Source: Selaginella moellendorffii | Lineage: Eukaryota > Plantae > Lycopodiophyta | Reading direction: 5' to 3' | NCBI RefSeq assembly: GCF_000143415.4 | Contig: NW_003314373.1 | Span: forward strand, 1 to 64,000 | DNA length: 64,000 nucleotides | Shown: positions 31,925-43,400 of the stretch, one piece after another | Layout: every line of letters begins with the position of its first letter | Position numbering within the stretch: the stretch's first letter is position 1 | Program-made: the position numbers and the translations under genes | Notes under the pieces: generated by a model | Database searches by the model: none | What the model was told of the DNA's origin: nothing | What the model saw: only the letters and a program-made list of their open reading frames with translations

Positions 31925-33269
31925 CTATGCCATGTAGGCGTGGGGCTTGTTGGCGTTGTCGTCCCAGGGCACTTGGAGATGGTAGCGGATGATGTTTTGG
32001 GCGCCTTCCACCAGTCCCCGGACGACGCTCGCGGCGGGCAAGATCTCATCGATCAATCCCACGCCCTCGCCCGCGTACATTGCCATCTCCTCGATCTTCC
32101 CAGTCGCGGAGGAATTGGGAACTTTTCCAGAGAAGCGCTTCACCTCTTCCTTCTGCAAGAGAATGGAGGGGGCTTAGAAAGATCTTTGGTGAAGTGTGAG
32201 CTCGATCTTACTTTGCCATGGACGATTGTTTCGCCGATCGTCACCTGCCCTTGCTCGGACTCGTCGGGGCCGAGCTTGTCTCTCCACTCCAGGAAAAATG
32301 GAGTTTTGATCACTCTCTGTGGAGCATTTGGCCACCGTTTCCTTCCGAAAATGTTGGTGAGCTCGGTATCGCCAGCGGACGCGGCCAGCACCATTTTCTT
32401 GTAGATCGGATGCGCATTCGACTCCAAGGTAGCAAGAAATCTTTCCAAGAAAAATGTAAGCTTTCGCGGATGAAAACTCAAAAACTATTCGAAACACTTT
32501 ACCTAGTTCCAAGGCAAACTCCCTTCGCACCAAGTGCCAAAGCAGCGACATAGCCACGAGCATCAACGATCCCTCCAGCCGCAATCACGGGAATCTTATA
32601 CTTCCAAACGGCATCCACAACTTTCGGCAACAGCGCGATGAGTCCCTCCTTCACGACCACAATTCTTCTCTACGTAAGTCTTTGAAAGAAAGTTTCAAGA
32701 GAAAATCACCACCTTTCCACGGACGTGGCCGCCAGCTTCAACACCTTGGACGATGATCGCATCCACACCAGCAAGCGCTGCGTCTTTGGCCTCGGCCACT
32801 GATCCTACCTGCGTGTGCGAAAACCCGAGAAAATCACGACAAAGCTGCTATTTTTTTTCTCACGAACCTGATGCACAACTTTCACTCCGCCTTGGTGCAT
32901 CTTGTCGACAAGATGACTCCCAAATTCACCCCAGTAAACCATCAGCACAGCGACACGCTCCTGGATCACAGCCTCGAGCATCTTCTCGTGTGGAAAATCC
33001 AGGATGATCCCCACTCCAAACGATCGATCCGTCAGCTCCCTGGTTCGCTTCACCATCTCCCTCAGCACCTCGGGCTCATCCTGGAGTCATCAAATTCCCA
33101 TTTTTCCTTGCAAAAAAAAAAAAAGGTTTTTTACCTGATCTGGAGCTCGAAGAACTCCAATCGCCCCCGCATTTGCAACCGCTGCTACGAGAGCAGGCCC
33201 CGAGATGTCTGGACCCAATGGCGCCTGGATTATTCCATGATCGAAACCAAGCAATCCTCCCCAAGCCAT
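31925..33269 (-). CDS. Nitronate monooxygenase / 2-nitropropane dioxygenase-family FMN oxidoreductase, multi-exon
   Basis: [70 protein letters not shown]. Confidence 0.93.
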
Positions 33270-33331
33270 AGCCGCGAGCGCCAAAAAGAGAAATGGAAAA
33301 CGTATCTAAGATCAACACAAATACTGGCAGA

Positions 33332-33338
33332 ACAAAAA
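33332..33338 (-). terminator. Putative RNA Pol III oligo-T terminator for the tRNA-Pro pair
   Basis: Minus strand reads ...CCCTA TAGGCTG TTTTT GTTC just past the 3' end of tRNA-Pro(AGG). Confidence 0.6.
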
Positions 33339-33345
33339 CAGCCTA

Positions 33346-33419
33346 TAGGGATGACAGGATTTGAACCTGCGTCCTTTTGTTCCCTAAACAAACGCGCTAC
33401 CTATCTGCGCTACATCCCT
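33346..33419 (-). tRNA. trnP: tRNA-Pro(AGG) with land-plant plastid trnP-type body
   Basis: Minus strand AGGGATG TA GCGC AGATAGGTA GCGC G TTTGT TT-AGG-GA ACAAA AGGAC GCAGG TTCAAAT CCTGT CATCCCT A; all four stems pair; anticodon at 33385-33383; T5 run about 8 nt downstream. Confidence 0.93.
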
Positions 33420-33494
33420 GTGTGTGCTCCACAGCATGCCTCTTCTTTCCTCGGCTTTTTATACTTTCATAGTGTTTCTTTTAACGAACGTCGA

Positions 33495-33568
33495 TAGGGA
33501 TGACAGGATTTGAACCTGCGGCCTTTTGTTCCCGAAACAAATGCGCTACCTATCTGCGCTACATCCCT
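33495..33568 (-). tRNA. trnP: tRNA-Pro(CGG) with land-plant plastid trnP-type body
   Basis: Minus strand AGGGATG TA GCGC AGATAGGTA GCGC A TTTGT TT-CGG-GA ACAAA AGGCC GCAGG TTCAAAT CCTGT CATCCCT A; anticodon at 33534-33532; differs from the neighbour at only 3 positions. Confidence 0.93.
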
Positions 33569-33769
33569 CCTAATCCCTCTCCACACAAGGTGGCGGACTC
33601 CACTTAAAGGATTGCCACGAAACAATGTAGGGCTGCATCAGCATAAAATGACATCGCTGGCCACGTCATTGCCACGTCAACTGACTAGGACGATTTCCAG
33701 CCGTTGGTTCAAGGGTTGCAGCTGAAAGACGATGGTGGTAATCGCTACGCTTACCATCGTTTAGTCGTA

Positions 33770-35477: not shown

Positions 35478-37210
35478 ATGAAAAGTGTCTCGTTTCTTCT
35501 TGTTCTTGCTGTGATCTCCAGCGTTTGCAATGCGCAAGACGTGAGTTTCAAAGCCACGACTCCCAAGATCACCAAAGGCAAGCCAAACACCTTCATTGGA
35601 ACTACTGGCGATCAGATCGCGACATCTCTTCTCGCATCGAAGACTCCCGCATTGCTTTGGGGCTCGGTTCCTGCGAGCGCAATCACCAAGATCTGCCAGA
35701 AGATTGTCAAAACTGGAAGGCTCCAGTATACTGCCAAGGTAAGTGGCGACTGGGGAGGAACCGAGAACCTCAAGCTAAAGGTAAAGAACTAGGCACAAGT
35801 ACCTTTGTTTCTTTGATCTTTCTCATGCTCACGACTGTAAACTATCTCCAGGTGGTCGCAACCGGTGGCTGTGGTGCTGCTCCAGATTCATCCGGGACAC
35901 AGTTCGTGTTCACAGACAACTATGGCCGCAAGAGTGCTGTAAGTTTTAGCGAGCTCCATAGACCATCTTGCAATAACAAAAATCACTGAATGCTTACCAG
36001 ATCGTTTGCCCAAACAACGCTAAGAAGAGCGGCTGTGGTGTGTACATGACCGGCAGTGACGTGGAAAGGCTCTACAAGAAGCGCTTGGAACTCGAGCAGC
36101 ATCTTTCACTCACAAACTCTTCTGGCGATCACCAGGCAGCTCGAAGATTCTTGCTTGGTGACTGCAAAGAAGAAGCAGGGAAAGGTCCCTCGGGATGATC
36201 CATATGTTCTTCTCGTTGAGCTTGTTCCTTCCTTTTTGCAGGAGCAATAGGAGGTGCAATCACGGGAGTGTTGGGAGTTGGAGGTTGCTTGGGACTGGGA
36301 CCATTGGCACCTTTCTGCGTCGTTGGCGTTTTGGGAGTGAGTGCTCAGCTTGGCGCGGCTGCTGGCTGCGTGAGTGCGTGCTTCCCGGGTGATGCAACTG
36401 TGCAAACTTCCACGGGCGAGACAAAGACGATGAGCCAGCTCCAAATCGGTGACAAGGTATCTATCCTGATCATCCATCGCTTCCACTAAACCTTTTTCCT
36501 CTGGTCGTGTCGTGAAGGTTGGGACGCTCAAGGACGGGAGGCTCGAGTTCAGTGAAATCTATGCTTTCGGCCACCGAGACTTGGAGCAGAAGAGTGACTT
36601 CGTCAACCTGGAACTATCCCACTCAAAGACCCTTGAGCTCTCGCCCCTGCATTTCGTGCCAACGCTACTCAAAGCTGGTGTGTGTCATCTCTTCCCTCCA
36701 CCACTTTTTTTTTCCAAGTCCCAAACTGACCAAGCTCACGAACCATTTCTAGGTGGAGTCGAATTCAAGCGTGCGCAAGACGTACTTGTCGGAGATGTGT
36801 TGACCGCTTCATCCTCCGCCAACAATTCGATCATGACTCCATTCCCAGTCACACGAATCTCGATCGTTACAAAGCCCGGCCTCTATAATCCATTGACTCT
36901 CCAAGGAACTATCGTCGTCAACGGAGTCGCCGCCTCGGTCCACAGCGACTGGTTCCTGGATGCCCTGTTTGACACGCTCGGCCTCACTGCTTACCTCCCA
37001 GCAGCATACCAGGCTATCCTCTCCCCGGGGCGATTGCTCTACACACTCCTCGGCCATGATTCATACCTCGCGCTCTACAAATGGATCGACGCCAGGATCA
37101 ATGTCGCTGAGTTCGGCACTGAAAATGGCGGCAAGATTGCAGCGGCGGCGCTGCTGGCGAGTGGAATCGCGTCCCTGCGATTGACCAAAAAGACCCGGAA
37201 TTTCGCGTAG
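35478..37210 (+). CDS. Secreted Hedgehog-like Hint/Hog autoprocessing protein, copy A; exons 35478-35780, 35852-35938, 36001-36184, 36242-36456, 36518-36677, 36753-37210
   Basis: Signal peptide MKSVSFLLVLAVISSVCNA; A|CFPGDATV (Cys codon 36379-36381), MSQLQIGDKV, FSEIYAFGHRD, LELSPLH, GLYNPLTLQGTIVVNGVAASVH, SRR-like YQAILSPGRLLY. Confidence 0.92.
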
Positions 37211-40465: not shown

Positions 40466-43400
40466 TGTGAGTGCATGGAATATGGAACAGGAATACAGAA
40501 ATGTGCATATCCATTAGCCCAAAAACCCTAGCTTATATACAGGAGCGAGTGGTCCGGATTGAAACCAATCCGACGGCTACCAAAATCCCACTACGCTAAT
40601 ATTAGTATATAGCATCGTAGCCGTACACTTGGCCCTCACATCATCCCCTCCTCTCGGAATAATGGAAGGCCATCAGGGGTCTCTTGTAGATGGGCCGGGA
40701 TCTGGAGGAACGTCAGGAGGAGGCATCGGCAGATCTGTAGACGGTATTAACTGCTCCTGATCCCTTTGTATGAAGCGTTTTAACCGTTGCACATGCACAA
40801 TCTCCGGAGGATCGGCTTGCTGAACGTCATGCCGAACCTCATAAACTTGTGGTCCAACTTGCCGCAACACCTAATACGGTCCTTTCCACTGCGCAAGGAG
40901 CCCCTTAGATAAACCACGTACCGTAAGATGGGGAAAACGGACTAACACCAAATCATCCACTTTGTACTCCGCAGATGGACGATGATGGGAATTGTAGCGC
41001 CGTTGTTGTCCCACTTGTACGCGGCCTAAGTGTTCAGCAGACTCTGCTCGGACAAGTGGAAGAATGCTTGTCAAATATTGATCCCATGACCTAGCATCAG
41101 GAGCTCGTGGCAATCGCGAAGGTAAACCCAGCTCTGTTGGTAATATTGGATCATGACCATATAGAAGTTTATATGGTGAAGCACCAACAGAACTCTGCAC
41201 CCCTGTGACATAGGCATACCGAAGAGACGGCAAATAATCATCCCAATCCGAATGCTGAAAGTTCACATACTTCGCAATCATCCCTTTGAATGTCCGAACA
41301 AGCCGTTCTACCAGACCGTCTGATTGTGGATGATAAGCACTCGTAAAAGTGTGGTGTATCCCCAACTGAGATGTCAAAACATGAAATACCTCAGCCATAA
41401 ATGCAGGACCATTATCCGAAAGAATCCGCTCTGGACAAGAATGCTGGAACACCACTCGATTGAGGAGGAAGTATCCAACAGCAGTTGCAGAGGCACTAGC
41501 AAGAGCACCAACTTCCACCCAACGAGTCAAGTAGTCAGAAGCAATAATAACATACTCATTGCCAACAGTCGATCGTGGAAAAGGTCCCATAAGATCAAAC
41601 GCCACCAACTCAAACGGACGGGAAACTGCAATTGACTCCAACCGTCCTTCCGCAGCACAAGGAGGAGTATTACGAGCTTGGCACCAAACGCAGCTACGCA
41701 CATACCGGATAATATCATGTCGCATCTCTGGCCAATAGAAAGACCTGCGCAGCTTCTCGGTGACACGACGGTGTCCCATATGCCCACCTAGAATAGAAGA
41801 ATCATGGTAGGCATGGAGAAACCATGGAATAAACACCAAAGGCACCACCAGCCGTAAATGATCATCAGGATCCGTCCCCACAAAATAAAGAAGGCCATCT
41901 TCAAGGCGATATTGAGAATGTAAATGCCGAAAAGGCAAGTCATCAGCAAGTGATGCAGGATTCTCAAACCCATCTCGAAACCTTCGAATCCACGGCTCAA
42001 TCTTTTGAGCCGCGCGAACCTCATCAAGAGAAGGTAGATCTTGCTCTGCGCCCTGTGGACACTGAACGTCAAGGACAGCAACCGCCGACGGCACAGAATC
42101 CTCATCTAGAAAATCCACAGATGCTGGAACAACAAGTTCGTCAGAAACATGAGAAAGGAGTGGAGAAGGAAGAGGAGCTCGAGAAAGGGCATCAGCATCA
42201 GCCATAGAACTCCCTGGGCGATGAACAACATCGAAATCATATATCTGAAGCTTCAAAGCCCATCGAGCCGTACGACCAACCAGGTTCTTCCGCTTCAATA
42301 ATGAAGTAACAGCAGCATGGTCACCTTCAAGTAACGTCCGAGAACCATGTAGATATGCATGAAGTTTCTCGAAACCCCAGACTGCTGCTAAACACTCCTT
42401 CTCCGTCGTGGAGTAGTTCATCTCCGCTGGTTGTAATGTACGGCTTATGTATGCAATGGGATGGCGTTGACCAGGCACACTCGAGCTCTCTTGCATCAAC
42501 ACACCTCCAAGACCAATGTCAGAAGCATCCACGCGCAAAATAAAAGGTCGAGTGTAGTTAGGATATGCCAAAACTGGAGGAGTCGTCAACAGCTCTTTGA
42601 GATTCACGAACGTTCGCTCACAATCCGGAGACCAGATGAAAGATGACGTTGATGACTTCAGCTCGCAATGGTGTAGTGCGATCGGAAAGATGATCCACAA
42701 AACGACCGAGATACTGCACCTTACCCAAAAAGCACTGCACATCATTCACACACTTCGGAGTAGGGAACTTTAGAACAGCCACAAGTTTGTCAGGATCAAC
42801 TTGCAAACCCTCACGAGAAATACGGTACCCAAGATAAGTTGTGTCCTTGGACCCAAACACGCACTTTGACCGCTTCAACTTTAAACCAACGTCGCGTAGC
42901 CGATCCAATACTTTACAAACATCACGAACGTGCTCCTCCCACGTCCCCTCCGAGTGGATCAAGACATCATCAATGAAGTCAGCCGTCACCTCCAGCATAT
43001 CGCAAAGAACTTCGTCCATCATCCGCTGAAAAGTTGCTGGAGCATTGTTCAAACCAAACGGCATCACCAAGAACTCGTACAAACCAAATGGTGTACGAAA
43101 AACAGTCTTAGGAATATCTTCTTTGGCCATCGATACTTGCCAATACCCAGAAGCAAGATCTAGCTTGGTGAACCAACGACTTCACCCCAAACGATCCAAG
43201 AGATCAGCAGTGTGAGGAAGAGGGTACACATCCGGGATTGTCACTTCATTTAACGGACGATAGTCGATGCAGAAACGAATACTCCCATCAGGCTTCATCA
43301 CAAGATGAGGTTCACATGCCCAAGGACTCCGCGACTTCCGAATAACACCCTTCTCCAACATCTCCTTGACGTTTGCACGTAAAATTTTGATCTCCTTGGG

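What the first reader, a model, noticed from the sequence alone, without database searches (positions are those of the whole stretch)
33383..33385. A34 anticodon on an organellar tRNA scaffold: predicted inosine editing
Seen: anticodon AGG on a plastid-type body. Established: tRNA-Pro(AGG) is a eukaryotic cytosolic isoacceptor converted to I34 by ADAT2/3 (TAD2/3), whereas bacterial and plastid TadA essentially edits only tRNA-Arg(ACG). Inference: the transferred gene adopted the eukaryotic decoding scheme (IGG reads CCU/CCC/CCA, CGG reads CCG). This pair alone could then read all four Pro codons, replacing the plastid U34 superwobble.
Basis: inference. Interest (0 to 1): 0.7.

Follow-up and report, generated by a model that had tools for sequence, protein, structure and literature searches.

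The report
Chloroplast-derived nuclear proline tRNA, AGG anticodon
The spikemoss Selaginella moellendorffii carries in its nucleus a proline tRNA gene of chloroplast ancestry whose anticodon begins with A; the predicted A-to-inosine editing was already shown in 2024 for the same gene family in S. kraussiana, so this is another example, not a discovery.

Summary
An intact 74-nt tRNA-Pro with anticodon AGG lies on the minus strand at 33346-33419, with A34 at 33385. A sister tRNA-Pro(CGG) lies 75 nt upstream at 33495-33568.

The window is Selaginella moellendorffii nuclear DNA. Both tRNA bodies are 68/74 identical to land-plant plastid trnP-UGG. All 85 plastid copies I fetched carry U34. The plastid similarity stops exactly at the tRNA ends.

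Berrissou et al. 2024 (PMC11573648) describe three nuclear "plastid-like" tRNA-Pro genes (UGG, CGG, AGG) in S. kraussiana. They are expressed and imported into chloroplasts, and A34 of the AGG species is modified to inosine.

I could not show editing in S. moellendorffii. Only ordinary RNA-seq runs were available. Their long reads across the gene show unedited A34 (0 of 6 reads, plus two contigs), and mature tRNA was not sampled.

The claim that this pair replaces a U34 tRNA is not supported. A third copy with a UGG anticodon is present in this species' transcript data.

This scan had already followed up the same gene pair on another piece of this genome, probably the second haplotype, and reached the same verdict.

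Verdict: a real, probably functional orthologue of a known system. Interest is low.

The parts
33346..33419 (-). Nuclear, plastid-derived tRNA-Pro(AGG) gene, 74 nt, with A73 discriminator, A1-U72 and G37
   Evidence: ARAGORN. Rfam tRNA 68.6 bits. Cloverleaf fold, z = -3.2. 68/74 identical to plastid trnP-UGG.
33383..33385 (-). Anticodon AGG: A34 at 33385, G35 at 33384, G36 at 33383. A34 is the predicted inosine site.
   Evidence: Sequence. None of the 85 plastid copies has A at this position. 0 of 6 long RNA-seq reads show a change here.
33495..33568 (-). Sister gene tRNA-Pro(CGG), 71/74 identical to the AGG gene
   Evidence: The differences are at positions 26, 34 and 47, all unpaired.
33420..33494 (-). 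75-nt spacer between the two genes with no run of four or more T, so the CGG gene has no Pol III terminator of its own. Holds TATAAA at -44 of the AGG gene.
   Evidence: Minus-strand RNA-seq reads and contigs cross it in three studies.
33334..33338 (-). TTTTT run 8 nt downstream of the AGG gene, a likely RNA polymerase III terminator
33090..33284 (-). First coding exon of the neighbouring nitronate monooxygenase gene. Its ATG at 33284 lies 62 nt downstream of the tRNA. This is context, not part of the tRNA.
   Evidence: Pfam NMO hits on separate exon ORFs. RNA-seq depth rises from about 33335 downwards, with molecule ends at 33310.

Best explanation
This is the S. moellendorffii member of the Selaginella 'plastid-like' (plike) nuclear tRNA-Pro family.

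An ancestral plastid trnP-UGG gene moved to the nucleus. It kept its internal A and B boxes, which serve as an RNA polymerase III promoter, and it was duplicated. One copy stayed UGG at another locus. A second copy was duplicated in tandem, and position 34 changed to C in one gene and to A in the other.

The AGG gene is most likely transcribed by Pol III, possibly as a CGG-AGG two-tRNA precursor that ends at the T5 run. A34 would then be deaminated to inosine, most likely by the nucleo-cytosolic TAD2/TAD3 (ADAT2/3) enzyme. The resulting IGG tRNA would read CCU and CCC, and more weakly CCA. It would be imported into chloroplasts, which have lost trnP, and perhaps into the tRNA-less mitochondria.

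Shown here: gene integrity, plastid ancestry, nuclear location, and constraint on the cloverleaf. Taken from S. kraussiana by homology: expression as mature tRNA, I34 and plastid import. Inferred: the enzyme and the order of steps.
For: Nuclear S. moellendorffii context: PPR, plant U-box and Ty3/gypsy genes. The helicase is 97% identical to SELMODRAFT_149865. The window's own proteins sit in 90% clusters holding only S. moellendorffii entries.

Plastid ancestry: 85 of 85 pattern matches are plastid trnP-UGG next to trnW-CCA. Similarity to plastid DNA is confined to the two 74-nt bodies.

Constraint: the bodies are 71/74 identical, while the 60-nt flanks are no more alike than shuffled sequence. 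All 8 sites that vary among the AGG, CGG and UGG copies are unpaired (hypergeometric P = 0.0007). The heterozygous differences listed in the reads all lie outside the tRNA bodies.

Pol III signals: A box TAGCGCAGATAGG, B box GGTTCAAATCC, and a T5 run 8 nt downstream.

Published evidence: in S. kraussiana the plike tRNA-Pro UGG, CGG and AGG are expressed and enriched in plastids, and A34 of the AGG species is inosine (PMC11573648). ADAT needs a full tRNA and modifies up to eight tRNAs (PMC8216470 abstract).
Against: No direct evidence for I34 or for a mature tRNA in S. moellendorffii. The runs found were ordinary RNA-seq. In these, 0 of 6 raw reads and both long contigs that cross position 34 show the genomic base. 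These are long transcripts, not mature tRNA, so the result weighs little.

Orthology with the S. kraussiana genes rests on the description in that paper.

Neither upstream region has a CAA triplet near -1 to -10.
Confidence: 0.78

Rival explanations
1. The tRNA is made and used, but A34 stays unmodified in this species. It would then read mainly CCU, as the few natural unmodified-A34 tRNAs do.
For: 0 of 6 long reads and two contigs show unedited A at position 34. Unmodified A34 tRNAs exist but are very rare (PMC11066159 abstract).
Against: The reads are precursor or read-through RNAs, not mature tRNA. The plike tRNA-Pro(AGG) of S. kraussiana is inosine-modified. Eukaryotic ADAT recognises whole tRNAs rather than one particular anticodon loop (PMC8216470 abstract).
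Confidence: 0.08
2. A34 is deaminated inside the chloroplast after import, by the bacterial-type plastid deaminase (TADA), rather than by cytosolic TAD2/TAD3.
For: The body is bacterial or plastid in type and the tRNA ends up in plastids. Some bacterial TadA enzymes also edit tRNA-Leu (PMC8266599 abstract).
Against: TadA-type enzymes act on the tRNA-Arg(ACG) loop, and this tRNA has G35, not C35 (established knowledge). Berrissou et al. saw no difference in modification identity or level between the plastid and total fractions.
Confidence: 0.08
3. The genes are dead relics of a nuclear plastid-DNA insertion (NUPT), and the A at position 34 is a neutral mutation.
For: Organelle-derived tRNA sequences in nuclei are usually non-functional (discussion of PMC11573648). 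Neither gene has a nearby upstream CAA motif.
Against: No plastid sequence survives outside the tRNA bodies. Two copies keep a perfect cloverleaf while their flanks are randomised. All variation is at unpaired sites. The same AGG/CGG/UGG set is expressed in S. kraussiana.
Confidence: 0.03

Closest known systems
Plastid-like (plike) nuclear tRNA-Pro AGG/CGG/UGG of Selaginella kraussiana (Berrissou et al. 2024, PNAS, PMC11573648)
   Same: Same genus and the same three anticodons. Both have a plastid trnP-UGG body in the nucleus with A and B boxes and a downstream T stretch. In that species the AGG tRNA carries I34 and all three are imported into chloroplasts.
   Different: A different species, and the paper's main text does not mention S. 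moellendorffii. Here the CGG and AGG genes are in tandem, the CGG gene has no terminator of its own, and neither I34 nor import has been measured. I could not compare sequences because the paper's supplements are not held.
Eukaryotic cytosolic tRNA-Pro(AGG), a substrate of ADAT2/ADAT3 (plant TAD2/TAD3)
   Same: A34-G35-G36 anticodon with G37, transcription from a nuclear gene, and expected decoding as IGG.
   Different: The body is of plastid (bacterial) type, with A73 and A1-U72. The tRNA's destination includes the chloroplast.
Land-plant plastid trnP-UGG
   Same: 68/74 identical. All stems match those of the plastid copies fetched, though the search pattern fixed most stem positions.
   Different: All 85 plastid copies have U34 and U38, lie beside trnW-CCA, and sit in AT-rich plastid DNA. 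The window copies have A34 or C34 and A38, and sit among nuclear genes.
Bacterial/plastid TadA (TADA) with tRNA-Arg(ACG)
   Same: A-to-I at position 34 on a bacterial-type tRNA that works in an organelle.
   Different: The anticodon loop differs (G35 instead of C35). The tRNA is nucleus-encoded, so the eukaryotic enzyme can reach it first.

Membership tests
Selaginella plike nuclear tRNA-Pro genes (Berrissou 2024) | Body derived from plastid trnP-UGG | tested here: met
   68/74 identical to plastid trnP-UGG. The 85 matching copies were all UGG; the nine contigs checked all had trnW-CCA adjacent and one had full plastid gene order.
Selaginella plike nuclear tRNA-Pro genes (Berrissou 2024) | Located in the nuclear genome of a Selaginella species | tested here: met
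   PPR, U-box and gypsy context. S. moellendorffii protein matches. No plastid sequence in the flanks.
Selaginella plike nuclear tRNA-Pro genes (Berrissou 2024) | Three isoacceptors: AGG, CGG and UGG | tested here: met
   AGG and CGG are in the window. A UGG copy with 7 differences appears in 984-1127-nt contigs and 11 raw reads from another locus. Its nuclear location rests on first-stage note s1-405377, which I did not check.
Selaginella plike nuclear tRNA-Pro genes (Berrissou 2024) | Pol III signals: A and B boxes and a downstream T stretch | tested here: met
   Boxes are present in both genes. T5 lies 8 nt after the AGG gene. The CGG gene has no T run of four or more before the AGG gene.
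Selaginella plike nuclear tRNA-Pro genes (Berrissou 2024) | Expressed as mature tRNA and enriched in chloroplasts | not testable with these tools
   No tRNA-seq or small-RNA run of this species was offered. Only long minus-strand RNAs across the genes were seen.
Selaginella plike nuclear tRNA-Pro genes (Berrissou 2024) | A34 read as G (inosine) in RNA | tested here: inconclusive
   0 of 6 raw reads changed at 33385, and contigs in two runs show the genomic base. These are long transcripts, not mature tRNA.
ADAT2/3 (TAD2/TAD3) substrates | A34 in a complete, foldable nucleus-encoded tRNA | tested here: met
   Cloverleaf fold and tRNA model scores. The need for a full tRNA is from the abstract of PMC8216470.
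ADAT2/3 (TAD2/TAD3) substrates | Deaminated by the enzyme | not testable with these tools
   Needs an in vitro assay or tRNA-seq.
TadA/TADA substrates | tRNA-Arg-type anticodon loop (A34-C35-G36) | tested here: not met
   The loop reads U-U-A-G-G-G-A, with G35. The loop requirement is from established knowledge.
NUPT (nuclear plastid DNA insertion) relic | Plastid sequence extending beyond the gene, with decay of structure | tested here: not met
   BLAST hits end at the tRNA borders. The cloverleaf is intact and all variation is at unpaired sites.

The most novel reading that the evidence does not exclude
In S. moellendorffii the CGG and AGG genes may form a single Pol III two-tRNA unit: there is no terminator between them, and RNA coverage begins at about the CGG 5' end. 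The AGG tRNA might then be deaminated not by cytosolic TAD2/TAD3 but inside the organelle, by a plastid TadA-type enzyme with widened specificity. That would put inosine decoding of proline codons on bacterial-type ribosomes in both chloroplasts and the tRNA-less mitochondria.
Probability: 0.06. Interest if true: 0.55.

Novelty: new member of a known kind. Interest (0 to 1): 0.2.

Why it matters
The finding shows that the AGG/CGG/UGG set of chloroplast-derived nuclear proline tRNAs also exists in the reference spikemoss genome, not only in S. kraussiana. The transfer and the anticodon changes are therefore probably old within the genus. The biology has been published since 2024: a functional organelle-to-nucleus tRNA gene transfer, I34 on a plastid-type body, and re-import into chloroplasts. 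What remains open is which deaminase acts, which prolyl-tRNA synthetase charges these tRNAs, and whether they also enter mitochondria.

Tried and rejected
1. Direct test of editing. The look-up of sequencing runs offered no tRNA-seq or small-RNA run, only RNA-seq. Read laying (501 letters, inside the 6,000 limit) showed long transcripts with unedited A34, which is uninformative for mature tRNA. One run (X16) laid nothing.

2. Sequences of the S. kraussiana plike genes. The paper's supplements are not held, so no direct alignment was possible.

3. Second-haplotype locus. The look-up of encoding contigs with SELMODRAFT_149865 found no record. Other exact-match genes lie more than 10 kb from the tRNAs, so I did not pursue this.

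4. Bacterial-type promoter or terminator scan. It found nothing relevant.

5. Bacterial origin. The only two matches in 185,579 bacterial and archaeal genomes are plant plastid contamination, so a bacterial origin is rejected.

6. NUPT relic. Rejected; see the rival explanations.

7. The neighbouring NMO gene was searched exon by exon, by reference. I did not build the joined spliced protein.

Full report
**Observation**

The + strand reads CCT at 33383-33385, which is anticodon AGG on the minus strand. ARAGORN finds exactly two tRNA genes in the 64-kb window, both on the minus strand: tRNA-Pro(AGG) at 33346-33419 and tRNA-Pro(CGG) at 33495-33568. Rfam's tRNA model gives 68.6 and 70.1 bits against a gathering score of 29, and nothing else in the window reaches any Rfam threshold. 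Both fold into the standard cloverleaf.

**Where the window comes from**

Long ORFs encode two PPR proteins, a plant U-box/ARM protein, a DDX23-like helicase, a serine acetyltransferase, an FtsH-like AAA protein and a Ty3/gypsy polyprotein fragment. This is land-plant nuclear DNA.

- The helicase is 97% identical to SELMODRAFT_149865 of Selaginella moellendorffii. The next best hits are about 64% identical.
- Two of the window's ORFs are themselves in the public collection, on a 557,149-bp contig. Their 90% clusters hold only S. moellendorffii entries located on other scaffolds.

I therefore read the window as one haplotype of the S. moellendorffii nuclear assembly.

**Is the body plastid-type?**

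I scanned the public collections with the 74-nt body, left open at position 34 and 12 other positions.

- 83 metagenome contigs and 2 contigs filed under bacterial genomes matched. All 85 carry anticodon TGG, and the median G+C of the loci is 33%.
- All nine contigs I checked have trnW-CCA about 40 to 150 nt downstream of trnP.
- L004 carries clpP, rpl20, rps18, rpl33, trnP, trnW, petA, cemA and ycf4, the usual land-plant plastid order.
- The window's AGG and CGG genes differ from the nearest plastid variant at 6 of 74 positions (16, 17a, 34, 38, 45, 47), all in loops. The pattern fixed most stem positions, so this last point is partly built into the search.
- BLAST of the whole window against these plastid loci hits only the two tRNA bodies and stops at their ends.

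The transfer is old enough that no plastid flank survives.

**Are the genes alive?**

- The two bodies are 71/74 identical. Their 60-nt upstream and downstream flanks are no more alike than shuffled sequence: 0.43 against 0.49 upstream, and 0.40 against 0.43 downstream.
- A third copy with a UGG anticodon shows up in transcript data from another locus. It has 7 differences from the AGG gene and appears in 984-nt and 1127-nt contigs in two studies and in 11 raw reads in a third. A first-stage note of this scan (s1-405377) places a solitary plastid-type tRNA-Pro(UGG) on another nuclear piece. I did not check that note.
- Across the three copies, all 8 variable sites (16, 17a, 26, 34, 38, 44, 47, 57) are unpaired. 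The chance of that under random placement is 0.0007.
- AGG and CGG share five states that differ from the UGG copy. They therefore arose by a tandem duplication after the split from UGG.
- The reads also carry heterozygous differences: 33280, 33339, a 9-nt deletion at 33314, an insertion at 33333, and four changes in the spacer. Every listed difference lies outside the tRNA bodies.
- The A box (TAGCGCAGATAGG) and B box (GGTTCAAATCC) are present, and a T5 run lies 8 nt after the AGG gene.

**Local anatomy**

The CGG gene has no run of four or more T before the AGG gene. In three independent RNA-seq studies, minus-strand coverage begins at about the 5' end of the CGG gene, with none above 33573. 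It then runs through the spacer and the AGG gene. This fits a two-tRNA precursor, but read-through into the next gene is an equally simple reading.

That next gene is a nitronate monooxygenase (Pfam NMO on separate exon ORFs). Its ATG at 33284 lies 62 nt downstream of the tRNA, and its transcripts appear to start near 33310. I searched its exons separately by reference and did not join them into a spliced model.

**The editing claim**

The only runs offered were ordinary RNA-seq. At 33385, 0 of 6 raw reads on the tRNA's strand differ from the genome. The long contigs of two other runs also carry the genomic base. All reads that show a change at that position belong to the UGG copy.

These are long transcripts. 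Mature 74-nt tRNAs are not captured by such libraries. Human I34 is reported at the precursor-tRNA level (PMC4446420 title), so some editing might have been expected here, but six reads cannot decide the matter. In this species the claim stays untested.

**What is already known**

Berrissou et al. 2024 (PNAS, PMC11573648) report the following for S. kraussiana:

[quoted passage not shown] One kind is closely related to plastid trnP-UGG and was named plastid-like (plike).
- The authors conclude that the plastid gene moved to the nucleus, was triplicated, and mutated at position 34.
- By mim-tRNAseq all three are expressed, and only the plike forms are enriched in chloroplasts.
[quoted passage not shown] - They ask which ProRS charges these tRNAs and suggest the tRNAs may also enter mitochondria.
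- They saw no difference in modification between the plastid and total fractions.

S. moellendorffii is not mentioned in the main text. The only paper in the library combining Selaginella, tRNA-Pro and inosine is this one. S. moellendorffii mitochondrial DNA has no tRNA genes at all (PMC5654404).

**Mechanism I commit to**

The steps are: Pol III transcription of a nuclear gene of plastid ancestry; processing; deamination of A34 by the nucleo-cytosolic TAD2/TAD3 enzyme; then import into chloroplasts that lack trnP.

- Shown here: ancestry, nuclear location and selective constraint.
- Carried over from the congener: expression, I34 and import.
- Inferred: the enzyme. ADAT needs a whole tRNA and accepts up to eight different anticodons (PMC8216470 abstract), whereas TadA-type enzymes act on the tRNA-Arg(ACG) loop and this tRNA has G35.

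The AGG/CGG pair does not replace a U34 tRNA, because a plastid-type UGG copy persists. The system mirrors the eukaryotic three-isoacceptor set.

**Earlier work in this scan**

A follow-up on a 223-letter stretch on another piece of this genome (s1-421931) reached the same conclusion. That piece is probably the second haplotype, since the alternative allele in the reads has one insertion and one deletion in the spacer and so keeps the same length. I reached my reading before seeing that note.

**Verdict**

This is a real, constrained and very probably functional gene: the S. moellendorffii counterpart of a system published in 2024. The predicted inosine is likely, at about 0.8, but was not measured here. 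Novelty is low.

Noticed in passing
L084:994-1292 and L085:44-345: Two contigs filed under bacterial genomes carry land-plant plastid trnP-UGG plus trnW-CCA. One is a MAG labelled 'uncultured Clostridia' (CAMUZI010000037.1). The other is a 684-bp contig of Zoogloea oryzae NBRC 102407 (NZ_BSPX01000288.1). Both look like plant plastid contamination of those assemblies.
   Followed up: partly
window 33420-33573: tRNA-Pro(CGG) has no T run of its own. Minus-strand RNA-seq coverage starts at about its 5' end and continues through the spacer into tRNA-Pro(AGG) in three studies. This could be a two-tRNA Pol III precursor.
   Followed up: partly
window 33090-33345: A nitronate monooxygenase gene starts 62 nt downstream of the AGG tRNA (ATG at 33284, transcripts from about 33310). 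The tRNA pair therefore sits in that gene's promoter region, and some transcripts include the tRNA in their leader.
   Followed up: partly
window 33280-33469: Heterozygous differences are visible in RNA reads: 33280 G>T in 14 of 29 reads, 33339 C>G, a 9-nt deletion at 33314, an insertion at 33333, and four changes in the spacer. Every listed one lies outside the tRNA bodies.
   Followed up: no
another locus of the same genome (not in the window): A plastid-type tRNA-Pro(UGG) copy with 7 differences lies inside transcript contigs of about 1 kb. In the stranded run its reads lie on the opposite strand from the NMO gene's reads, so that transcript appears to run antisense to the tRNA sequence.
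   Followed up: no
window 40871-42745 (-): ORF for a Ty3/gypsy-type polyprotein fragment holding only RNase H and integrase domains.
   Followed up: no
window 35478-37210 (+): The first-stage reader flagged a Hedgehog-like Hint-domain gene here (note s1-375107). I did not examine it.
   Followed up: no
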